IMG/VR virus record: IMGVR_UViG_3300027793_000052
Span: 62,001-126,000 of that record
Length of the DNA: 64,000 nucleotides
Strand: one strand, 5' to 3'
Shown: in pieces, positions 6,771 to 54,163 of the stretch
Layout: each line of letters opens with the position of its first letter
Position numbering within the stretch: position 1 is the stretch's first letter
The notes under the pieces: model-generated
What the model saw: only the letters and a program-made list of their open reading frames with translations
The model's database searches: none
Told to the model about the DNA's origin: nothing
Translations under genes and position numbers: made by a program

Positions 6771-7025
6771 ATGAAATTCGAAATAGGTGACAGAGTTAAG
6801 AAAAAGAACGGTGGCTTATTTTACTGCACACAAGAAGAATGTGGTACCATTGTAGGGTTTAGTGACCATGGTTCGGATCCTTGGGTCCACATAAAAGGTG
6901 AATATTATATGATAGATGGAATTAAGCAGATAAACCACCACAATCCTAGATTTTTGGTGAAAGTTGAAAAAATAAATTTTTGTGAAAAAAATATTAAAAA
7001 AATAAAAATTACCTCATGTGATTAG
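6771..7025 (+). CDS. small KOW-like protein with basic C-tail
   Basis: MKFEIGDRVKK...NIKKIKITSCD. Confidence 0.6.
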   Translation: MKFEIGDRVKKKNGGLFYCTQEECGTIVGFSDHGSDPWVHIKGEYYMIDGIKQINHHNPRFLVKVEKINFCEKNIKKIKITSCD

Positions 7026-15403: not shown

Positions 15404-15637
15404 ATGGAATTAAAAGTCGGCAAAACATATATAACAAATAACCATCCTGAAATAGATAGTGATTTGCATAATAAGAGATTTATGGTTATAAGTTCTGAGA
15501 AAATACAAGATACACAAATTTACCTATTAAAGTTTGACCATTGTGAAAAACAACGTATGATAAATGAAGTTAATGTTAGTAAATATATCACAGAATCTAT
15601 AGAACCATTAAGACATTTAAAACTACATAAGATATGA
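15404..15637 (+). CDS. small KOW-like protein with basic C-tail
   Basis: MELKVGKTY...IEPLRHLKLHKI. Confidence 0.6.
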   Translation: MELKVGKTYITNNHPEIDSDLHNKRFMVISSEKIQDTQIYLLKFDHCEKQRMINEVNVSKYITESIEPLRHLKLHKI

Positions 15638-18024: not shown

Positions 18025-18831
18025 ATGAAAAATCTAATTAAAAAGATATTGAAGGAAAATGATTTTAATCCAGATGATTTTAGTTGGGTTAATTTGGAAT
18101 TGGAACCAATTAGAGATCGTAAACATAGATCGGAAATTATTGAAGATACAATAGCCAAAGTTAAAGAATATAAGGGTTGGAGAATATATAAGGATAAATT
18201 TAATGGTGTGGTTTATTGGGATGGTACTGAAGGTTACACTGGTATGGCGACACCTGAATGGGATGAGGCTTTTAAAATACCTGTTGATATAAGCTATCAT
18301 AATGATTATGATAATGTAACTGTTATACATACCCCTGAATTTAAATACGTTGTGGAGTTACAGGAATGGTATAGTAAAAATTATTTTGAGATTGTGTATA
18401 AAGTACTAACCGATTATATAAACCAAGATGAGGTACCTGGTATAATTGAAACAAAAAGTTTAATTAAAAAGATATTGAAGGAAAATGAATGGGAATGGGC
18501 AGAAGATTTGATTGGTGGTGATAGTTTATATGCCAAAGCCATGTCATTAATTCCTGAAAACCTTAATGAATATAATAGATGTCTTATTTTATTTGAGAGG
18601 GAATTAGATTGGGATGAAGCCCAAATTTTATTAAAAGTCCTTAGGGAGAAAGGTTGGAAGATAACTGAAGTTTCGGATGATAGTAGAATTAAATGTATTC
18701 TTAAATATAGTAAAACTCACGAAGGATATGTTAATTTAAAAAATCCTTTTATTTCATTTGGGGATTCTAGGTATACGTACAACAATGTTAATTCTGTTAA
18801 GTGGGAAGATGTTTTAAAAATTAAAATTTAA
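18025..18831 (+). CDS. leader-bearing protein made of two fused leader genes
   Basis: MKNLIKKILKEN at the start and KSLIKKILKENEWEW internally (18451-18500). Confidence 0.75.
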   Translation: MKNLIKKILKENDFNPDDFSWVNLELEPIRDRKHRSEIIEDTIAKVKEYKGWRIYKDKFNGVVYWDGTEGYTGMATPEWDEAFKIPVDISYHNDYDNVTVIHTPEFKYVVELQEWYSKNYFEIVYKVLTDYINQDEVPGIIETKSLIKKILKENEWEWAEDLIGGDSLYAKAMSLIPENLNEYNRCLILFERELDWDEAQILLKVLREKGWKITEVSDDSRIKCILKYSKTHEGYVNLKNPFISFGDSRYTYNNVNSVKWEDVLKIKI

Positions 18832-18969
18832 ATTTTTTATTGCCAATTAAATTATTTTCCTTATCTTTGTGGTATATTGATATGATGTTATAATCATATC
18901 TTGCCACTAACAAATCTTCTTTAGGGGCCGTGTATACTCCAACACAATCAATTTAAAAAATTTCATTAT

Positions 18970-19174: not shown

Positions 19175-19861
19175 ATGAAAAATTTAATTAAAAAGATATT
19201 AAGGGAAAATGAATGGGAATGGGCGGAGGAAACATTGGACCGAGCAGTTGATCCTTATAGAATGGATGTAAATGAATTAGTTTATTTTCTTAATCAATTT
19301 TTTCAACAAAATAAATCCCCAAGATTTAATAGAACATATGTGGCAGAATATGATAGAGGTACCTTTACCATTGGTGATGAAACAGGATTATATGTTTCAA
19401 TGTTAGATACGGATGAAACTTTTTATTATGCCATAAAATCTTTAAAAAGAAGCATAATAAGTCTAACCAATAACAGAGAACTATTGGATGAATATCAGGA
19501 TTTATATGATACATTAATACCTTTGATAAAAGAAGATATAATGGAACAGGCAAACGATATGGACTGGTTTAATATCGATGATATGCCAGAACCAAAAGGA
19601 ATTGCCCTAGCAAATATAATTGAAGAATATTTCAAAGATAATAATTTACCTTATCATATTATGATAAGACAAGATAATGCCGTTATATACATCAAAGATA
19701 CCAATTTTATATATTTTAGCGGATGGACCGAATTATTCACCATGGATAATATTATTAATGATATAATGATTGATTTAGATTCCTTACAATCATCAAAAAG
19801 CATTAATAGATGGAATATCTTATACAACAATCTTAAATCTTTATTTGATAAATTAAAATAA
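19175..19861 (+). CDS. leader-bearing protein with two tandem homologous modules
   Basis: MKNLIKKILRENEWEW; internal PLIKE-DIMEQANDMDWF junction. Confidence 0.75.
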   Translation: MKNLIKKILRENEWEWAEETLDRAVDPYRMDVNELVYFLNQFFQQNKSPRFNRTYVAEYDRGTFTIGDETGLYVSMLDTDETFYYAIKSLKRSIISLTNNRELLDEYQDLYDTLIPLIKEDIMEQANDMDWFNIDDMPEPKGIALANIIEEYFKDNNLPYHIMIRQDNAVIYIKDTNFIYFSGWTELFTMDNIINDIMIDLDSLQSSKSINRWNILYNNLKSLFDKLK

Positions 19862-19887
19862 TTTTCTTACATTTATTCCATATAAGA

Positions 19888-20187
19888 ATGGAAATAAAAG
19901 AAGGAGATAGATTTCTTAATTTAAACACAGGCACCATTATTAAAATAGATTATATTGTTAATAGACCTGAATTTTATTTTATTGGCAATGATGAAGCAGG
20001 AGAAGAATTTTCAACAATAATGAGGGATGAATGGATATGCAAGGTTAGCAATTTAACCGACCCAACCAAATCCAAAGAAATTCCTTTGGATAGTCTAAAG
20101 GGAATAATAGAAAATTCCAATCTTATACAAGCTTACAAGGAAGAACCCATTAAACCAATAAAACATATAAAACAATATAAACTATGA
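19888..20187 (+). CDS. small KOW-like protein with basic C-tail
   Basis: MEIKEGDRF...PIKPIKHIKQYKL. Confidence 0.65.
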   Translation: MEIKEGDRFLNLNTGTIIKIDYIVNRPEFYFIGNDEAGEEFSTIMRDEWICKVSNLTDPTKSKEIPLDSLKGIIENSNLIQAYKEEPIKPIKHIKQYKL

Positions 20188-20444
20188 TAATCTTAAAAAC
20201 ATTGGCCCCAATTCTAGGATTGATTGCCTTTATTATGGCAATTAGAGAATTCTTGGGCAAAGAAAGACCCAAGAAAAATTGGTATAGAGTTTATTTAAGC
20301 CTTGTAACTTTAATTATACTTACCACATTGGCAATACATGATTGGTTCTCGGTAACCATTTGGTTAATTGTATTTGTAATTTGTTTTTTTAGGCTAGAAA
20401 AGGATGGTATTCACATATTCAAGAATGACAAGATGACAGAATAA
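20184..20444 (+). CDS. small membrane protein
   Basis: three hydrophobic segments. Confidence 0.6.
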   Translation: MIILKTLAPILGLIAFIMAIREFLGKERPKKNWYRVYLSLVTLIILTTLAIHDWFSVTIWLIVFVICFFRLEKDGIHIFKNDKMTE

Positions 20445-20467
20445 AAATTTGGAACAAGATTTGTACT

Positions 20468-20725
20468 GGATGGCCGGCCTATGGGGACCCCCTGTATAGC
20501 CCCCCGGCGGGGGTGCCCGTATCCCCCCTCCCCCTCTGGGAGGGTCTGCGGGGTAGAAAGCGGGGTTCGGTTCCCCATTCATATCCGGGACCTGGTGGCA
20601 AAATTTTCCGGGAAAAATTTAAGCCAAAAAAGCGTTCCTAAAATTCCGGGAAAAATTGTCTAGAAAAAGGACCCCACCCCCTACATAGTTAAAAACCTAT
20701 TCCGGAATTTCCGGGAAAAAATTCA
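20468..20725. other. GC-rich non-coding island with TTCCGGGAAAAA repeats
   Basis: 83/120 GC over 20471-20590; repeats at 20606, 20644, 20709; hairpin CCCTCCC/GGGAGGG. Confidence 0.7.
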
Positions 20726-20767
20726 CCCATATTTGTTTCTCTATATGGGAATTATTATATTTGTGTT

Positions 20768-21019
20768 ATGGAATTTAAATCAGGAGATAAAGTTATAATA
20801 ACAAAACGGTATAAGGGTAATTATGCCGATGTGGGCATGGAGGGTGAGTTTATTAAATCGGAAGAAGATTGGGATGGTGACGAAAGTTCACCAACCTATG
20901 GTACAATGATTACATTCTATCAATTAAAAATTGGTACCCAAAAAACTTGGTGTGTTGGTATTAAACCAAAAGGTGTACATGATTGGAATGGTGAGGGAAT
21001 TAAATTTAGATTTGTATGA
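20768..21019 (+). CDS. small KOW-like protein with basic C-tail
   Basis: MEFKSGDKVII...GIKFRFV; TATATTTG upstream. Confidence 0.65.
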   Translation: MEFKSGDKVIITKRYKGNYADVGMEGEFIKSEEDWDGDESSPTYGTMITFYQLKIGTQKTWCVGIKPKGVHDWNGEGIKFRFV

Positions 21020-21020
21020 T

Positions 21021-21263
21021 ATGGAATATAAGGTGGGAGATATTCTTATCCTTAGGGAAGTTATAGATGATATAAAGTTATATAAGACAGAACTAGGTAA
21101 GGAACAAGTTATTGTGGAGATAAGAAAGAATGGTTTTCTTCATACAAGATTCCGTAATAGTTTGTTATCCCATTATCTTCATCCTGATGGTACATATGTT
21201 AAATGTTGTGAGCATAGGAGAGATTTAATTAGTAAGTGGGTACCACAATTAAAAATTATATAA
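21021..21263 (+). CDS. small KOW-like protein
   Basis: start re-assigned to ATG 21021, MEYKVGDILI...VPQLKII. Confidence 0.6.
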   Translation: MEYKVGDILILREVIDDIKLYKTELGKEQVIVEIRKNGFLHTRFRNSLLSHYLHPDGTYVKCCEHRRDLISKWVPQLKII

Positions 21264-21266
21264 AAA

Positions 21267-21524
21267 ATGAATTTTACCAAATTAAGAAAAGGTGATATTG
21301 TAAGATGGGATCTAGACTCAATCCTATATAAAATATTGGATATTGATACCACCCAAGATAATCAAATACTTTGGGGTTGGATTGGTAGTGATTGGGATGG
21401 TGGTAGTATATATAAAACAAGGTGGCATAATTCTTATGATAATATAAATGATTTAATATCCAAAGGTCAAATTAGTATTATTGAAAGAGGTGGCTTTTAT
21501 TTAAAACCATTAAAGTTTATATAA
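21267..21524 (+). CDS. small KOW-like protein with basic C-tail
   Basis: LRKGDIVRW...YLKPLKFI; paralog of 21526. Confidence 0.65.
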   Translation: MNFTKLRKGDIVRWDLDSILYKILDIDTTQDNQILWGWIGSDWDGGSIYKTRWHNSYDNINDLISKGQISIIERGGFYLKPLKFI

Positions 21525-21525
21525 T

Positions 21526-21792
21526 ATGAAATTAAACATTGGGGATAAATTTGTTTGGTCGGATGAAGGGATTATTTATACCGTCATGGATATTAATACC
21601 TCAAGGGACATAGGTCAGGTTTTGGTTGAATGGTGGTCACATGATATTTATGGCATATATGGAAAAAAGATTACGTGGGATTCCACCCTTCAAACCTTGG
21701 AAGGTTTTTTATCTGATGGCACAATATGCCTTATTTATCAGGGCAATCTTTTGGGACCAAAAGGATCCGTTAAAAAATTAAAATTAATTTAA
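21526..21792 (+). CDS. small KOW-like protein with basic C-tail
   Basis: MKLNIGDKFVW...PKGSVKKLKLI. Confidence 0.65.
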   Translation: MKLNIGDKFVWSDEGIIYTVMDINTSRDIGQVLVEWWSHDIYGIYGKKITWDSTLQTLEGFLSDGTICLIYQGNLLGPKGSVKKLKLI

Positions 21793-21795
21793 TAT

Positions 21796-22032
21796 ATGAA
21801 TAAGGTTAAAATTGTTGGATATCATAAAAAAACTTATTGGTATTCTAATTATGTTGGCCAGATTTTTGATTTTATTCGTATTGAGGAAGATGGTTCTTAT
21901 ATTGTTCTTGGCACATCTGTTAATCCTTATCATACTCATGTTATTTATCATATATGGTCTGAGGATGGCAGGCTTGTATTTGATAATTCATTTGTTTTAT
22001 CGCCATCTAAAATTAAATTTAAATTTATTTGA
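21796..22032 (+). CDS. small protein with basic C-tail
   Basis: KTYWYSNYVGQIF...PSKIKFKFI; paralog of 22995. Confidence 0.65.
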   Translation: MNKVKIVGYHKKTYWYSNYVGQIFDFIRIEEDGSYIVLGTSVNPYHTHVIYHIWSEDGRLVFDNSFVLSPSKIKFKFI

Positions 22033-22156
22033 ATAATTTAAAAATGTGTGGATGGGGAAAAATATCCGGATTACGTCCATTTATCCCCCCGCCCCCTTTT
22101 TTTTATTTGTTTTTTAAATTCTTTTTCTTATCTTTGTTTTATCAAATTTATGATAT

Positions 22157-22393
22157 ATGAAAACATTTGTTAAATTATTAATGGTTATTTCTTTTATTCT
22201 ATCATTCATTTTTGTTGGTGATATGGTTGTGGATGCAATTATGGGTTTATTTCCCATTTCAGCAAATGAATGGTTTCCCATTCTTAGATTTTTGGTTTGG
22301 ATATTTACCTTCACCTTTAATTTGGCTTTAACAATTGTTTTATATTTTATTGTGGTTTATATTATTTCTTTGATAATAGGTTTATTGGATTAA
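22157..22393 (+). CDS. small membrane protein
   Basis: hydrophobic; TATCTTTG upstream. Confidence 0.6.
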   Translation: MKTFVKLLMVISFILSFIFVGDMVVDAIMGLFPISANEWFPILRFLVWIFTFTFNLALTIVLYFIVVYIISLIIGLLD

Positions 22394-22517
22394 AATTATT
22401 ATTTTTGAAGTTTTTTATGGCGGATAACCAGATGAAAGGTATATAGTGCATATCACATTTAGTGTATCAAAGAAATGGAACCGTCACCCTCCCATGTAAA
22501 AGTGGGAGGTTTTTAAT

Positions 22518-22613
22518 AGTCAGGTGGCGGAATATGGTGTTAAAATAAGGAGGAGAGGTTACCGAGCCGCAAACCATGCGGGAGCTTCACAGGTTCGATT
22601 CCTGTCCTGACTA
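22518..22613 (+). tRNA. atypical tRNA-like element (anticodon undetermined)
   Basis: 7-bp acceptor AGTCAGG/CCTGACT, T8, T-arm ACAGG-TTCGATT-CCTGT; D and anticodon region expanded and non-canonical. Confidence 0.55.
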
Positions 22614-22782
22614 CAACGGCAGGTGAGGTGTATTATCCTCTGAAATAGTTTAGACTGCACAAGTCCTTAAATGGGCAGACATATCGTGATTAGTCCACGA
22701 TGACTTTCTTACTTGGAAAGAAAAGTGACGTTTATGTTATAACTTGTACGAGAACAAGTTTTTACAAAAAAAATTAAAAATC

Positions 22783-22995
22783 ATGGAAGAAAGATCGATT
22801 GAATTTAAAGATATTTTTGAGCAATTGTGTCAAACATTTAATGAAATCAAATATAACAATGGTGATATATCTGATGTTGGCAATGAAATTGGTTTTTCTT
22901 TGGGTAAGATATTGCCAAATTTATCAGAGGGTGAGATTAGAGATTTTATTTATGGTATTCAACATGGAATTAGTTTAAGTAATAATCAACATTAA
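22783..22995 (+). CDS. hypothetical protein
   Basis: start re-assigned to ATG 22783; DISDVGNEIG motif. Confidence 0.6.
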   Translation: MEERSIEFKDIFEQLCQTFNEIKYNNGDISDVGNEIGFSLGKILPNLSEGEIRDFIYGIQHGISLSNNQH

Positions 22996-23222
22996 TGGAA
23001 AAAATTAAAGTTATTATTACAAAAAGTTCCAAGGACACTTATTGGTATGCTAATAAGTTGGGTCAAACTTTTGAATGTTATTTAAATCTTTATGGGAAAA
23101 GTTTTCAAGTTGTTAGTGATACAACACATGGTTATATCGAAACCAAATATATTAATATTGAAGATTGTATTTCTTTTGATACCATATCTCATCGGTATAT
23201 AAAAAAATTTAAATTTTGTTGA
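22995..23222 (+). CDS. small protein with basic C-tail
   Basis: DTYWYANKLGQTF...RYIKKFKFC. Confidence 0.65.
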   Translation: MEKIKVIITKSSKDTYWYANKLGQTFECYLNLYGKSFQVVSDTTHGYIETKYINIEDCISFDTISHRYIKKFKFC

Positions 23223-23261
23223 TAACAATTATTGTGAATTTTATTTTGAAACGTTTATAAT

Positions 23262-23558
23262 ATGACAATAGAAGATAAATTGGCTTATGCCAAAAAAATA
23301 TATAAACAACATTCTAAGATTAGAGCTGTACTATATAGTGATGGTAGTTGGTGTAACCTTATACGTAGATCGTTAGGTGAACCACGAATTTATCAAGATA
23401 TTCAAGGTTATGAATGGATTATAAGTAATCATAATTTATACAATCCTATTACAGATACTTGGTCTTTGGTTTATGACAAGGATTTAGATATTTGGATAAA
23501 CCCAAAAGAACAGGTATTTATACCAAAAATATTAAAACGATTTATTTTTGCCAATTAA
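23262..23558 (+). CDS. hypothetical protein with basic C-tail
   Basis: ends FIPKILKRFIFAN. Confidence 0.6.
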   Translation: MTIEDKLAYAKKIYKQHSKIRAVLYSDGSWCNLIRRSLGEPRIYQDIQGYEWIISNHNLYNPITDTWSLVYDKDLDIWINPKEQVFIPKILKRFIFAN

Positions 23559-23577
23559 AATAATTTCCATATCTTTG
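23547..23577 (+). promoter_or_regulatory. Bacteroidota-type (early) promoter
   Basis: TTTGCCA-N16-TATCTTTG. Confidence 0.65.
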
Positions 23578-23581
23578 TTGT

Positions 23582-23980
23582 ATGGAAATTAAAGCTGGAA
23601 CCAAAATTAAGGATTTATCTAAAAAAGATTTTAAAAAAGTTTTTAAGCACGCCATTTTTTTCTGTGAACAAAATTTGGGTCTTAATAGACGTAAGTCCGA
23701 ACCTTTACAAGTTTTATGGTTAAACAAAGAAACCAAACAAACTTATGGTTGGTATGACCCTGTGGATAATTCCATTCAAATTAACGCTGATTGCAAAACC
23801 GTTTCTGATTTAACAAAAACTTTAATTCATGAATGGACCCATCATTTGCAACCAATCTTAAGTCAATATGGTAAATTATATAAAAAATATGGTTACGCCA
23901 ATCACCCAATGGAAATTGAGGCTTATGATGCGGAAAAAAAATGGAACCGTAAAATGTTGGCCTACCTAAGGTCCGTATAA
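23582..23980 (+). CDS. zincin-like metallopeptidase
   Basis: LIHEWTHHLQ (HExxH) and Y.NHPMEIEA. Confidence 0.7.
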   Translation: MEIKAGTKIKDLSKKDFKKVFKHAIFFCEQNLGLNRRKSEPLQVLWLNKETKQTYGWYDPVDNSIQINADCKTVSDLTKTLIHEWTHHLQPILSQYGKLYKKYGYANHPMEIEAYDAEKKWNRKMLAYLRSV

Positions 23981-45182: not shown

Positions 45183-46889
45183 TTAATCACCCCACACCCA
45201 TTTTTTATTACCACAATCCCAAATAATGTTGTAACCACGTTCATACATTATTTGTTTTTCAGTCTTATTCGGATCATAACCATCTTTAATTAATTTATCT
45301 TTCCTAAAATTATATCTGTGCATTCTAACCAAGTCTTTGAAATACCAATAATTTAATTCGGTATTTTTTAAAAATTTAAAGCCCAATTTTTCATATAAAC
45401 CACCATCAAAATACCTGTTATCGGAATAAGATACGACATTTTTTGGTTTATAATTTTGTATGAAATGTCCGAACAATTTTGAAGCCCCACCAACTATTTT
45501 TGTGTTTAATTTATTACAAAATCTTAACATCTCATATTCATAATTGTTGTTACCCACACCTGAACGATTACCGAATGTCATAACAGAAACCAATTCGTCT
45601 TTATAATATAAACCCAAATTTATAGACGCGTTAACAGACCCTTGAATGTGGTTATTACCCAAAAATTTCGATGATTCTTTATTGGTTATTGTTTTTATAA
45701 CACACTTTCTTGCGAATATATTGGTATCGAATATGTTTAAATTAGCTTTTATAATAGATAATACAATATCTTTTTTAAATAACCACTCATCTTCAAAAAT
45801 ATGTAATAGTTTAATATTTTTATCTTTACATAATAACGTCTTATTTATGTGATATGTTTTACTTTTATTTATTTCACTATGCCAATACAATCCATCATAT
45901 TCTATGGCTAAATTTTTCTGCGGTATGAAAATATCCAATTCACAACCACCGAGTATCTTTTTATTATTAATCTCAACTAACATCCCAGTCAAATTCTCTA
46001 TATAACTAACAATATCTCTATGTGGTTTGGTGTAGTTTGATCCGTTAAGTGGGAAACAATTGATGCATATTTCATACCCCAACCTATTTCTTTGATTAAA
46101 TAAATAATTGTCTATTTTAAAAATTTTGTCACATTTATCACATTTTAATGTTAATACTTTATTTTCGTAATCAATAAAAGTATACCCACTGAAATTATTT
46201 AATTTATCTATTATTTTGTTTTTAAAAATCACATTTTTAAACTCTTCACTTTGTGAGTAGTTCTCTACATTAAATTTTGTTAAATTAGTTTTTTTAGATT
46301 TTTCTTTAACTTCTTCTAACTGAAAAGGGTTTGATACGCCGTATTTTTTAATAAGATTCTCTTTTCTTAAATTCTTTATATCGTCAGAATACCAATGGTG
46401 GGTAAAACCGTATCTTTCTAAATTAGTTTTTTTTACTTTATTTTTTATTTCATCATTATGTAAACTACATGTTACACCATACTTTTCTAAATTAGTTTTT
46501 TTTACTTTATTTTTTATTTCATCATTTCTTAAAGGACTTGTTACACCATATTTTTTTACATTAGTTTCCTTTATTTTATTTTTAGTATTTTGGTTATTTA
46601 CACCACATTTTATAGAACAGTTTTTATTATAACCCTTTTTTAGTGAGATAAATTTCACATCATTTACCCCACAAACCTCACATTTAGGTGGTTTGTTAGT
46701 ATTATTTATATATAAATAAATTTTCTCTTTAAAAGTTAAGCTGTCTTCTTTATTGAAGTTTATTATTTTTGAGTATAAATCGTAGTTATTGTCCCGTAAC
46801 CAACTTTCTCTAACCCTAAGACCGTTATTATTTTCAGTAAAATAATCCAGTAAATTTATATTATCCATATTGTATGACTTATTTATCAA
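45183..46889 (-). mobile_element. Hef-like / Vsr-type homing endonuclease
   Basis: KTNLEKYG repeats; ELDIFIP..NLAIEYDGLYWHS; FARKC; GGASKLF; IWDCG. Confidence 0.75.
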
Positions 46890-52834: not shown

Positions 52835-53006
52835 ATATAAAGAAATTAAAACGGGTTTTATCTTTAAAGTTACGAATTTCACCACCACTTTGGATGGTAT
52901 TGTGGATACTGTACATTTGAAAAGAATAGATACTGATGATACTTTAGAGGTGGGCGAAGATAGATTTCAGAAAAACTTTATAAATGTTTATGATGAACAA
53001 AAATGA
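52818..53006 (+). CDS. small hypothetical protein
   Basis: ORF overlapping both neighbours. Confidence 0.5.
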   Translation: MKLKNKYKEIKTGFIFKVTNFTTTLDGIVDTVHLKRIDTDDTLEVGEDRFQKNFINVYDEQK

Positions 53007-54163
53007 ACGTAATGGATAAACAATACACAGACCTTTTAAAGGATATATTGGAGAATGGTGTCGAGAAAGATACTAGAAACGGTAAGGTTTTAAGTGTGTT
53101 CGGGAGAACAATACGATACAAATTTAAGGATGGAAAATTCCCACTTCTTACGACCAAAAAAATGTATTTCAAAGGAATTGTAACAGAATTGTTATGGTTC
53201 TTACGTGGTGATACAAACATCAAATACCTTGTTGATAATGATTGTCATATTTGGGATGGTGATGCGTATAAGAACTATGAGAAAGAAATTTTAAGACAAC
53301 GTGAATTACAAAAGAAAGAAGTAGAAAGATTGCGTAATTCTGGTAAGAGAGTTAAAGTATCTCTAATTGAACTACTATCAAAAGAAGAATTCATAAACAA
53401 AATAAAAACAGATGATGAGTTTGCTAAGAAGTGGGGTGAATTAGGTCCAATTTATGGTAAACAATGGAGAAGTTGGAATGGGAATGGAAGTCCATTAACA
53501 AAAGATTACGAAGGTAATATAAGTTCATATTTAGTTAAACCAATAGACCAAATCGCAAACCTAATCCGAGACCTTAAAACAAATCCAGACTCAAGACGAT
53601 TAATGGTTAATGCTTGGAATGTTGGTGAATTGGATACGATGGTTCTCCCACCATGTCATTATGGATTTCAAGTTTATACAAGAGAGTTGAGTTTAGAAGA
53701 GAGAGAATCTCTAATGGATAAAATCTACGGGTTAAATAAAGAAACAAGACAAGTACCTTGGCATATAGTTGATATTGATAAAGCTAACATTCCAACCAGA
53801 GCAATCTCTTTACTTTGGAATCAACGCAGCATCGATACTCCATTGGGTTTGCCGTTTAACATAGCATCATATGGTTTATTATTAGAAATAATTGCTAAAG
53901 AGGTTAATATGGTTCCTGATGAGTTAATTGGTAATTTAGGTGATACTCATATCTACTTAAATCAAATTGATGGTGTTAAAGAACAAATTACACGAGAAGG
54001 TTTTGAATTACCTAGATTAAAAATAAAAGGTATAAATGATAATCATATGATATATCCTAAACTAATACCAACAACTGGTGAGGAGGAATTTTATGAAATA
54101 TCTGATTTTATATTAGAAGGATATCAATCTCACCCAACAATTAAATTCCCATTATCAAATTAA
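53003..54163 (+). CDS. thyA: thymidylate synthase
   Basis: FPLLTTKK, ELLWFL.G, GPIYG.QWR, SRRL, LPPCH, QRS.D..LG.PFN, GDTHIY.N. Confidence 0.95.
   Translation: MNVMDKQYTDLLKDILENGVEKDTRNGKVLSVFGRTIRYKFKDGKFPLLTTKKMYFKGIVTELLWFLRGDTNIKYLVDNDCHIWDGDAYKNYEKEILRQRELQKKEVERLRNSGKRVKVSLIELLSKEEFINKIKTDDEFAKKWGELGPIYGKQWRSWNGNGSPLTKDYEGNISSYLVKPIDQIANLIRDLKTNPDSRRLMVNAWNVGELDTMVLPPCHYGFQVYTRELSLEERESLMDKIYGLNKETRQVPWHIVDIDKANIPTRAISLLWNQRSIDTPLGLPFNIASYGLLLEIIAKEVNMVPDELIGNLGDTHIYLNQIDGVKEQITREGFELPRLKIKGINDNHMIYPKLIPTTGEEEFYEISDFILEGYQSHPTIKFPLSN

What the first reader, a model, noticed from the sequence alone, without database searches (positions are those of the whole stretch)
19888..23558. Family of small early proteins sharing a basic/hydrophobic C-terminal tail
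Seen: about ten 75-100-aa ORFs, many starting with a KOW/SH3-like 'K-x-G-D', end in alternating Lys/hydrophobic tails. Examples: PIKHIKQYKL (19888), GIKFRFV (20768), PQLKII (21021), LKPLKFI (21267), VKKLKLI (21526), KIKFKFI (21796), IKKFKFC (22995), ILKRFIFAN (23262), LRHLKLHKI (15404), IKKIKITSCD (6771). The bodies are otherwise divergent. Inference: a portable C-terminal docking strand or localisation/degron signal, the early-gene counterpart of the late N-terminal leader.
Basis: partly seen in the sequence, partly recalled or inferred. Interest (0 to 1): 0.6.

Follow-up and report, generated by a model that had tools for sequence, protein, structure and literature searches.

The report
Shared C-terminal K-F-x-F tail motif
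Seven neighbouring small genes of a 318-kb AT-rich freshwater jumbo phage, from at least two unrelated SH3-like protein families, end in the same short basic/aromatic peptide ([K/R]-F-x-F), which is conserved in distant relatives and looks like a portable docking tag whose partner is unknown.

Summary
Two effects are mixed together.

1. Loose Lys/hydrophobic ends occur genome-wide. They follow from AT-rich gene 3' ends and the A-rich, Shine-Dalgarno-less start regions of abutting genes. The loose pattern is not enriched: 36 observed against 36 expected.

2. A stricter motif, P-h-K-x-[IL]-x-[KR]-F-x-F-x(0-3), is enriched 6- to 10-fold over composition-preserving nulls.
- Seven of its eight strict hits lie in 12 consecutive genes (20768-23558).
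- It recurs in metagenomic homologues whose bodies are only 30-40% identical. The hydrophobic positions are 100% conserved, the x positions vary, and the distance to the next gene varies.
- The two families that could be studied have no detectable body homology. Only the tails align.
- One family belongs to a large superfamily (1034 hits) whose other members mostly lack the tail.
- AlphaFold models give confident small beta-barrel cores and low-confidence tails.

So a portable, protein-level C-terminal tag is supported. Whether it docks proteins, marks them for degradation or localises them is untested, and no partner was found. The examples at 6771 and 15404 do not fit the strict motif, and 21021 fits only weakly. 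The "early gene" label is unverified.

The parts
19888..20187 (+). 99-aa ORF opening MEIKEGD, tail EEPIKPIKHIKQYKL (tail codons about 20143-20184)
   Evidence: The external-tail matrix scores it 10.4 bits. Orthologues in L007, L014, L016 and L019 end in PLKAINKFVF, PLRSINKFVF, PIKQIKQHTLL and PINFLKQYKL.
20768..21019 (+). 83-aa ORF opening MEFKSGD, tail GIKFRFV (20996-21016)
   Evidence: It is a strict-motif hit. The tail is identical in relative L019. No homologue beyond near-identical contigs was found.
21021..21263 (+). 80-aa ORF opening MEYKVGD, weak tail PQLKII (21243-21260)
   Evidence: The gene is absent from close relatives L018 and L019, where the 20768-type stop abuts the 21267-type start.
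21267..21524 (+). Family A member, 85 aa, tail LKPLKFI (21501-21521)
   Evidence: Paralogue of 21526 (phmmer E=1.4e-7). The orthologue P0004 (80% identical) keeps the tail. Matrix score 8.5 bits.
21526..21792 (+). Family A member, 88 aa, tail GPKGSVKKLKLI (21754-21789)
   Evidence: It has 31 homologues with K-F-x-F-type tails. AlphaFold gives block-mean pLDDT 85-93 for residues 1-70, 69 for 71-80 and 46 for 81-88, with 84-88 under 50. The fold resembles SH3/Tudor/FeoA/CarD barrels at Z about 5.
21796..22032 (+). Family B member (TYWY core), 78 aa, tail SKIKFKFI (22006-22029)
   Evidence: Paralogue of 22995 (E=6.6e-5). The next start lies 125 nt downstream, past a terminator-like element, so start-region overlap cannot explain this tail.
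22995..23222 (+). Family B member, 75 aa, tail YIKKFKFC (23196-23219)
   Evidence: AlphaFold gives block-mean pLDDT 73-95 for residues 1-60 (lowest for 41-50) and 54-58 for the tail, residues 61-75. The core is an SH3 fold. Relatives end in KRFNFL, KKIKF, KLRFYFV and KKLNFV.
23262..23558 (+). 98-aa ORF, tail IPKILKRFIFAN (23520-23555)
   Evidence: Strict-motif hit, 9.2 bits. Its last codons (TTT ATT TTT GCC AAT TAA) overlap a promoter-like repeat that also occurs at 18840. This tail may therefore be partly shaped at DNA level.
15404..15637 (+). 77-aa ORF opening MELKVGK, tail EPLRHLKLHKI; doubtful member
   Evidence: It resembles the 19888 tail only weakly (phmmer E=0.08). It is not among the matrix hits.
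6771..7025 (+). 84-aa ORF opening MKFEIGD, tail NIKKIKITSCD; doubtful member
   Evidence: It matches only the loose pattern, which the composition null explains.

Best explanation
The tail is a real short linear peptide motif selected at protein level. Its consensus is P-h-K-x-[I/L]-x-[K/R]-F-x-F followed by 0-3 free residues. In one clade of AT-rich freshwater jumbo phages it has been appended, behind a Pro/Gly hinge, to several unrelated small SH3-like beta-barrel proteins encoded side by side.

It most likely acts as a flexible docking peptide. The hydrophobic triad (h-3, F0, F+2) would insert into a groove or pair with the edge of a sheet on one common partner, of the phage or of the host. 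The flanking Lys/Arg would add electrostatic contacts. Each different barrel domain would thereby be brought to the same hub.

Shown: the motif exists, is enriched, is clustered, is conserved independently of the bodies and of the downstream context, and lies outside the folded core.

Inferred: that it docks, and to a single shared partner. The AT-rich coding bias and the A-rich start regions of abutting genes make such Lys/Phe/Ile codons cheap and explain the looser look-alikes. They do not explain the motif itself.
For: (1) Enrichment over composition-preserving nulls, and tight clustering: 7 of 8 strict hits in 12 consecutive genes.

(2) Conservation in homologues.
- In family A, 31 sequences with mean body-column identity 0.54 keep positions -3, 0 and +2 100% hydrophobic. 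F is found in 26 and 27 of 31 sequences at positions 0 and +2, and K at -1 in 25 of 31.
- Position +1 varies (S, K, T).
- Across 30 unique external tails, F occupies 21 and 26 of 30 at positions 0 and +2. F makes up only 5.3% of tail residues genome-wide.
- The x positions use Ser, Arg, Val and Thr codons that contain G or C, and K is replaced by R through AAA to CGA or AGA.

(3) Independence from downstream context. The motif is kept whether the next start overlaps the stop (TAATG), lies 19-39 nt away, or lies more than 100 nt away.

(4) Portability.
- Families A and B share only the tail (hhalign).
- Family B belongs to a superfamily of 1034 hits. Only 6 of its 76 small representatives matched the tail pattern used; P0056 and P0059 carry variants of it.
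- Typical members end about 9 residues after the core, against 15-22 for tail bearers.

(5) AlphaFold gives confident cores and low-confidence tails in both families.

(6) Up to 3 (once 6) trailing residues are tolerated, as with internal or near-terminal docking motifs.

(7) The gene cluster is recovered without any difference in contigs from four freshwater metatranscriptome libraries, while 23468-23700 is not covered.
Against: - No partner was identified.
- No sliding clamp is detectable by Pfam models, and the phage family-B DNA polymerase does not end in the motif.
- All tail-bearing homologues come from similarly AT-rich genomes (31-32% GC), so a DNA-level constraint cannot be excluded by a comparison across base compositions.
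- AAA and TTT are the dominant codons, so synonymous variation says little.
- Comparisons with close relatives show few changes in the tails, but not significantly fewer than expected.
- The 23262 tail overlaps a promoter-like repeat.
- A low pLDDT for the tail could reflect shallow alignments rather than true flexibility.
- One family A copy in L007 is frameshifted before its tail, so the tail, or that copy, can be lost.
Confidence: 0.45

Rival explanations
1. By-product of nucleotide composition. Gene 3' ends are AT-rich and overlap the A-rich, Shine-Dalgarno-less start regions of the next gene. Codons made only of A and T encode only K, N, I, Y, L and F, so Lys/hydrophobic tails arise without any selection on the protein.
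For: - The last 9 or so codons are 72-78% AT against 69% in gene interiors.
- The tail-enriched residues are exactly K (1.86x), I, N, Y, F and L, while A, P and G are depleted.
- Upstream of starts A is 0.51-0.65 at -14 to -10, and G is at most 0.15 from -14 to -1. The same profile is seen where the upstream gene abuts (n=178).
- Tail AT is highest (0.80) where the gap to the next gene is under 5 nt.
- The profile matches translation start regions in Bacteroidetes, which lack Shine-Dalgarno sequences and favour A at -3 (PMC6847099).
- The loose pattern is not enriched (36 against 36.4).
- Four of the cluster genes abut the next start.
Against: - The strict motifs are 6-10 times above nulls that keep this composition.
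- F is 13-16 times over tail background at two fixed positions, while the equally AT-only I, N, Y and K are not.
- The x positions use G/C-containing codons.
- The motif persists with gaps of 19 to more than 100 nt downstream, and after 21796 and 22995 where no start abuts.
Confidence: 0.15
2. Structural element. The tail is the last beta-strand of the small barrel, or a strand exchanged between subunits. It is conserved because it closes the fold or drives homo-oligomerisation, not because it docks on a third party.
For: - An F-x-F pattern with basic neighbours is typical of an amphipathic edge strand.
- Both bodies are SH3-like barrels whose termini often pair.
- DSSP marks a two-residue bridge at 82-83 in the family A model.
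- A distant common origin of all the barrels with an ancestral tail cannot be excluded.
Against: - Tail pLDDT is 46-69 in family A and 54-58 in family B, beside cores of 85-95.
- Most members of the family B superfamily fold without any such extension.
- The h-3/F0 spacing does not fit one face of a simple strand.
- A Pro/Gly hinge precedes the motif.
Confidence: 0.2
3. C-terminal degron. The basic/hydrophobic end marks these proteins for a host AAA+ or tail-specific protease and so limits their lifetime. Models are the ClpX C-motif-2 of MuA (RRKKAI), Lon and Tsp (comparison from my own knowledge).
For: - The window's own tails end in non-polar residues after two or three basic ones (KKLKLI, IKKFKFC, KIKFKFI), which resembles MuA's RRKKAI.
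- The tails are flexible in the models.
Against: - 24 of 43 homologue tails carry two extra polar or acidic residues after the motif (-SD, -SN, -NN), and others carry -VGT, -NVK or -SNVEMS.
- Degrons read with the free carboxylate are, to my knowledge, inactivated by such ends (as with ssrA-DD).
- The conserved part is the F-x-F triad, not the terminal residues.
Confidence: 0.1
4. Recombination scar. The tail plus gene junction is a short DNA homology at which ORF cassettes are inserted and lost in a hyperplastic region, as with the PeSL cassettes of T4-type phages. New ORFs would simply inherit the resident last codons.
For: - Gene 21021 is present in the window and absent from L018 and L019. 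The breakpoints lie exactly between a tail/stop and the next ATG.
- A terminator-plus-promoter-like cassette (22036-22156) is conserved upstream of family B genes in L007 and L014.
- The tails of 20768 and 21796 share 19 of 22 nt.
- PeSL-mediated shuffling is documented in PMC2839356.
Against: - This can explain how the tail spread but not why it stays. The motif positions remain conserved while bodies diverge to 30-40% identity, and the substitutions are class-conservative.
- With K=AAA (85%) and F=TTT (83%), identical peptides give near-identical DNA anyway.
Confidence: 0.1

Closest known systems
C-terminal clamp-binding peptides: bacterial QL[SD]LF, the PIP box QxxLxxFF, and the tails of T4/RB69 gp43, gp33 and gp55 that bind gp45 (from my own knowledge)
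   Same: A short hydrophobic/aromatic peptide at or near the C-terminus, carried by many unrelated proteins. It is flexible, tolerates a few trailing residues and serves one hub. The spacing h..h..F.F recalls Q..L..FF, and RB69 polymerase ends in MFDF.
   Different: Position 1 is K/R, not Q (only 21021 has QLKII). The aromatic residues are separated by one residue. No clamp gene was found with PF02916, PF09116 or PF00712, and the phage family-B polymerase ends in ...KDRFEELQEN without the motif.
ClpX recognition class C-motif 2 (MuA ...RRKKAI) and ssrA-type C-terminal degrons (from my own knowledge)
   Same: Basic residues followed by non-polar residues at the extreme C-terminus of a flexible tail.
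   Different: Homologues end in -SD, -NN, -SN or -VGT after the motif. The conserved core is F-x-F, not the last residues.
T4-type N-terminal capsid-targeting leader, a portable signal in the same genome (comparison from my own knowledge)
   Same: A short shared terminal peptide on otherwise different proteins. This genome has an MKNLIKKILKE(N/E) leader family and a T4 gp21-type prohead protease (Peptidase_S77, E=8e-30).
   Different: It sits at the opposite terminus, has a different sequence and is on different proteins. Nothing links the C-terminal tail to the capsid.
PeSL promoter/stem-loop cassettes of T4-type hyperplastic regions (PMC2839356, PMC4122927)
   Same: A region of small ORFs of unknown function with cassette-like gain and loss. 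A conserved terminator-plus-promoter-like element lies between the ORFs.
   Different: PeSLs are non-coding. Here the shared element is translated, in one frame, and conserved as a peptide.
SH3-like, Tudor and KOW small beta-barrels (FeoA; the CarD and UvrD/PcrA RNA-polymerase-binding Tudor domains; uL24/NusG KOW)
   Same: The fold of the bodies. Family B matches SH3 domains at Foldseek probability 0.9-0.99 and TM about 0.5. Family A matches at Z 4-5.
   Different: There is no sequence-family membership: Pfam gives no hit, and PHROGs gives none for family A and only sub-significant matches to unknown-function families for 22995. The Z values are in the range of a common arrangement. None of these families is defined by a K-F-x-F tail.

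Membership tests
SH3-like small beta-barrel fold (bodies of the proteins) | Five-stranded barrel superposable on solved SH3, Tudor or KOW domains | tested here: met
   The family B model has block-mean pLDDT 73-95 over residues 1-60. It matches SH3 domains at Foldseek probability 0.9-0.99 and TM 0.45-0.58, although E is only about 0.1. Family A matches FeoA, CarD, Tudor and KOW domains only at Z 4-5, the range of a common arrangement.
KOW motif family (Pfam KOW / NusG / uL24) | Sequence match to the KOW profile | tested here: not met
   No Pfam family reaches significance for any of the ten proteins.
Bacterial beta-clamp-binding motif QL[SD]LF | Gln at position 1 with hydrophobic residues at positions 2, 4 and 5 | tested here: not met
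   In the 30 unique external tails aligned on the motif, the residue before the first Phe, which would take the place of the Gln, is K (19 of 30) or R (4 of 30). Among the window's tails only 21021 has Q-L-K-I-I.
T4-type clamp (gp45) binding tails | A gp45-type clamp in the genome, and the same tail on the polymerase | tested here: not met
   PF02916 and PF09116 give no match in the genome. The control genomes could not validate these two models. The family-B polymerase (952 aa) ends in ...KDRFEELQEN.
C-terminal degron read with the free carboxylate (ssrA / MuA C-motif 2 / Tsp substrates) | Non-polar residues at the very last positions, conserved among homologues | tested here: not met
   The window's own proteins meet it (-I, -V, -C). 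Of 43 homologue tails, 24 end in two polar or acidic residues and others have 3-6 trailing residues.
Composition / start-region overlap artefact | Motif frequency equals that expected from tail composition, and the motif is tied to the next start | tested here: not met
   The loose pattern meets it (36 against 36.4). The strict motif does not: 4 against 0.44 and 5 against 0.86, with a dinucleotide null of 0.37 and 0.65. The downstream gaps are variable.
Short linear docking motif (general class) | Lies outside the folded domain, has a few fixed positions, is conserved independently of the domain, and binds a defined partner | tested here: inconclusive
   The first three features are met. A partner cannot be identified with these tools.

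The most novel reading that the evidence does not exclude
A clade of freshwater jumbo phages, probably infecting Bacteroidota, uses its own short linear motif system. A C-terminal [K/R]-F-x-F peptide, grafted onto at least five different small SH3-like proteins, recruits all of them to one hub of the host or the phage that is not yet known. This would be analogous to clamp-binding or SSB-tail networks but with a new motif and a new partner.
Probability: 0.3. Interest if true: 0.7.

Novelty: new variant of a known kind. Interest (0 to 1): 0.5.

Why it matters
Most small genes of jumbo phages have no known function and no handle for experiments. A shared, conserved 10-residue tag on several unrelated small proteins offers a direct handle. 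A single tail peptide could be used as bait to fish out the common partner and so assign a pathway to a whole block of orphan genes at once.

The case also shows how AT-rich coding bias and Shine-Dalgarno-less start regions can imitate such tags, and how to separate the two. If the partner is a host hub, the motif would be a new example of phage take-over by linear-motif mimicry in a poorly studied host group.

Tried and rejected
- Megablast and tblastn against GenBank phages found nothing.
- Pfam and PHROGs on the ten proteins gave only sub-threshold or unknown-function hits.
- tRNA and Rfam scans found nothing above threshold.
- All-against-all BLAST and phmmer within the genome detected only the pairs 21267~21526 and 21796~22995.
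- IMG/VR scans with 20768 returned only identical contigs.
- Foldseek against the PDB gave no hit at E<=0.001 for either model.
- A homodimer prediction for family A (complex prediction) gave no verdict, which is neither support nor evidence against.
- The clamp idea was tested: no clamp profile matched, and the polymerase C-terminus lacks the motif.
- Larger proteins that score in the tail scan (thymidylate synthase 53003-54163, a 769-aa nucleotidyltransferase, the S77 protease) look like chance hits.
- A DNA-word test for AAATTTARATTT found too few copies to decide between frames.
- A literature search for a described jumbo-phage C-terminal motif found nothing relevant.

Full report
CONTEXT. 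The window is bases 62001-126000 of a single 317,983-bp virus contig (30.3% GC, CheckV 96% complete). The phage occurs in many freshwater metagenomes. It encodes a T4 gp21-type prohead protease, a family-B DNA polymerase and thymidylate synthase. I called 389 ORFs with a codon-usage score. There is no Shine-Dalgarno signal. Upstream of starts, G is at most 0.15 from -14 to -1, A peaks at 0.51-0.65 from -14 to -10, and A at -3 is 0.53-0.71. This is the pattern described for Bacteroidetes (PMC6847099), so a Bacteroidota host is a reasonable inference.

THE OBSERVATION. The region 19888-23558 holds, on the + strand:
- 19888 (99 aa)
- a small membrane protein (20184-20444)
- a GC-rich non-coding element
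- 20768, 21021, 21267, 21526 and 21796, packed 1-5 nt apart
- a terminator/promoter-like element
- a second membrane protein (22157-22393)
- a tRNA-like element
- 22783, 22995 and 23262

BACKGROUND EFFECT. Genome-wide, the last 9 or so codons are 72-78% AT against 69% in gene interiors. The rise is at codon positions 1 and 2. The residues enriched in the last 7 positions are exactly those encoded by A/T-only codons: K 1.86x, I 1.29x, N 1.22x, Y 1.17x, F 1.16x, L 1.09x. A, P and G are depleted. Tail AT is highest (0.80) in the 142 genes whose stop lies within 5 nt of the next start. Abutting genes carry the downstream start-region profile inside their last codons. Accordingly, the loose description "basic residue plus alternating hydrophobics near the end" fits 36 of 389 proteins. 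A null that shuffles residues within each tail column expects 36.4, and a position-specific dinucleotide model expects 28. The 15404 tail likewise does not score with the strict motif.

THE REAL SIGNAL. Stricter patterns behave differently.
- [KR]h[KR]hh$ occurs 4 times (expected 0.44 and 0.37; P=0.0006).
- [KR]FxF.{0,3}$ occurs 5 times (expected 0.86 and 0.65; P=0.002).
- Seven of the eight proteins matching either [KR]FxF.{0,3}$ or h[KR]hh$ lie in 12 consecutive genes, 20768-23558 (permutation P<5e-5).

HOMOLOGUES. Two paralogous pairs are detectable: family A (21267~21526, E=1.4e-7) and family B (21796~22995, E=6.6e-5).
- Family A has 31 metagenomic relatives. Their tails read ...EIEKFKFS[DN]...HLPKFSF[NSG]N...SIKKLKLVGT and ...IKEFTL.
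- Family B belongs to a superfamily of 1034 proteins (E<=1e-3) built around a core of about 58 residues (MKVKIIKASKPTYWYA..IGE.FEV....DCEVV) with no Pfam entry.
- Most small members of that superfamily end about 9 residues after the core. Only the closest relatives of the window's proteins carry a 15-22-residue extension, ending in KLRFYFV, IKKLKF, KKLNFV, KLKFYFV, KLVFKFLK or KRFNFL.
- Distant syntenic contigs (L007, L012, L014, L016; 31-32% GC) show the same tails on orthologues of 19888 (PLKAINKFVF). They also show them on further small ORFs (LKEFRFSVD, KLTFKFG).
- Thirty unique external tails, aligned on the aromatic pair, give P(-7) h(-6) K(-5) x [IL](-3) [KPE](-2) [KR](-1) F(0) x(+1) F(+2), followed by 0-3 (once 6) residues.
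- A matrix built from these external tails finds 9 proteins at 6 bits or more in this genome. The shuffle null expects 1.75 and interior pseudo-termini expect 0.89. The hits include proteins outside the cluster: a 104-aa protein ending GLNKFNFLK and a 161-aa membrane-anchored K-I-G-D protein ending KPFKFVN. A 65-aa protein ending EKILKQYKFI resembles them but scores only 4.8 bits.

PEPTIDE OR DNA? Several points favour selection on the peptide.
- Positions -3, 0 and +2 are 100% hydrophobic in family A, whose body columns average 54% identity. Position +1 varies freely.
- F fills 70-87% of two fixed positions although it makes up 5.3% of tail residues. The equally AT-only I, N, Y and K do not fill those positions.
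- The x positions use TCT, AGT, AGA, GTT and ACG, and K is replaced by R through two-base changes.
- The motif is retained whether the next gene overlaps the stop, starts 19-39 nt later, or lies beyond a terminator.

There are caveats.
- AAA and TTT dominate codon usage, so synonymous sites say little.
- Every tail-bearing relative is AT-rich.
- Close-relative comparisons show no significant deficit of changes in the tails.
- The last codons of 23262 coincide with a promoter-like repeat.

PORTABILITY AND STRUCTURE.
- A profile-profile comparison of families A and B aligns only the last seven residues (VKKLKLI against IKKFKFC), so no body homology is detectable.
- The AlphaFold model of 21526 (31-row alignment) has mean pLDDT 82.8. 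Block means are 85-93 for residues 1-70 and 46 for 81-88, and residues 84-88 are under 50.
- The AlphaFold model of 22995 (84 rows) has mean pLDDT 81.7. Block means are 73-95 for residues 1-60, and the tail (61-75) scores 54-58.
- The family B core is an SH3 fold (Foldseek probability 0.9-0.99, TM about 0.5).
- Family A resembles FeoA, CarD, Tudor and KOW barrels at Z 4-5, a level that may only reflect a common arrangement.
There is no membership of a sequence family.

MECHANISM. The best reading is a flexible docking peptide that brings different barrel domains to one partner (confidence 0.45). Tolerance of trailing polar or acidic residues argues against a degron or PDZ-type signal that reads the free carboxylate (the comparison rests on my own knowledge of ssrA-DD). 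The low tail confidence, and the many tail-less family B relatives, argue against an integral strand, though this rival keeps 0.2. The clamp-binding analogy was tested and not met. Cassette turnover at tail junctions is real: 21021 is absent from L018 and L019 with breakpoints at the tail/stop and the next ATG. A terminator/promoter-like cassette is also conserved in L007 and L014. Both are reminiscent of PeSLs (PMC2839356). This may explain how the tail spread, but not why it is maintained.

EXPRESSION. Contigs from four freshwater metatranscriptome libraries cover 19800-23390 without a single difference. One contig spans 20574-22093, which covers 20768 through 21796 and ends at the terminator-like element. 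Positions 23468-23700 are uncovered in all four. RNA libraries can contain DNA, and contigs show neither strand nor timing, so this is only suggestive. "Early" remains unverified. Genes with the N-terminal MKNLIKKILKE leader (18025, 19175) lie immediately upstream, so the neighbourhood is not cleanly "early".

VERDICT. It is a new variant of a known kind, the C-terminal short linear motif. Interest 0.5.

Noticed in passing
window 13850, 16712, 18025 (and internally at 18441-18506), 19175, 7488(-); genome 138056-138868: A family of proteins begins with MKNLIKKILKE(N/E), and the DNA of the leader is itself repeated (66-nt repeat D1). The genome encodes a T4 gp21-type prohead protease (Peptidase_S77, E=8e-30). 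This fits a cleavable capsid-targeting leader with an I/L-x-E site.
   Followed up: partly
window 20446-20740: A GC-rich (59%) non-coding island in a 30% GC genome, followed by three copies of TTTCCGGGAAAAA just upstream of 20768. It is 86% conserved in L019, and parts are conserved in L007, L012 and L014. It has no Rfam match and may be a structured RNA or a regulatory region.
   Followed up: partly
window 22036-22156: A GC stem plus T-run followed by TTATCTTTG (the Bacteroidetes-type TAnnTTTG box) upstream of 22157. It is about 80% conserved upstream of family B genes in L007 (5449-5527) and L014 (5627-5700). An RNA-library contig ends at 22093. It looks like a mobile terminator/promoter cassette of the PeSL kind.
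   Followed up: partly
window 22518-22613: A tRNA-like element with a perfect acceptor stem and T-arm (GGTTCGATTCC) but a 30-nt insert in the D region. It scores 28.7 bits on the Rfam tRNA model, just under the 29-bit cut-off, and ARAGORN misses it. The summed contig depth in the four RNA libraries is highest there, but the figure includes abundant contigs of other origin that match only 20-30 nt of its ends.
   Followed up: partly
window 18840-18884 and 23548-23584: A repeated promoter-like element, TTGCCAATTAAA..N..TATCTTTGT.GTAT, ends 0-8 nt from an ATG (directly before the 23582 start). Eighteen called starts have TAnnTTTG 2-8 nt upstream, which suggests leaderless or very short-leader mRNAs.
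   Followed up: partly
window 21021-21263 compared with L018 and L019: The whole 80-aa gene is missing in close relatives. The deletion or insertion runs exactly from the stop of the 20768-type gene to the ATG of the 21267-type gene.
   Followed up: yes
L007 4332-4601: A family A copy is frameshifted. Its normal tail (EIEPCKHLPKFSFS) is readable in another frame just after the stop. P0033 is the same truncated form.
   Followed up: yes
window 23582-23980: A 132-aa protein with an HEWTHH (HExxH) motif. It has sub-threshold matches to DUF6782 and SprT-like metallopeptidases. It is conserved after the cluster in L004 and in an ENA contig.
   Followed up: no
window 45183-46868(-) and four paralogues elsewhere in the genome: Five paralogues, 247 to 584 aa as called. 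The window's copy combines DUF7487 with a Mom-like domain. The four long copies (534-584 aa) end in a shared ...WDCGN/YDCGN motif.
   Followed up: no
window 20184-20444 and 22157-22393: Two small predicted membrane proteins sit inside the cluster. The second is conserved in L007 (7248-7475) and L012 (3794-4030).
   Followed up: no
genome 14000-21500 (outside the window): A run of nine non-coding GC-rich islands of 77-165 nt, possibly a tRNA gene block. It was not scanned.
   Followed up: no
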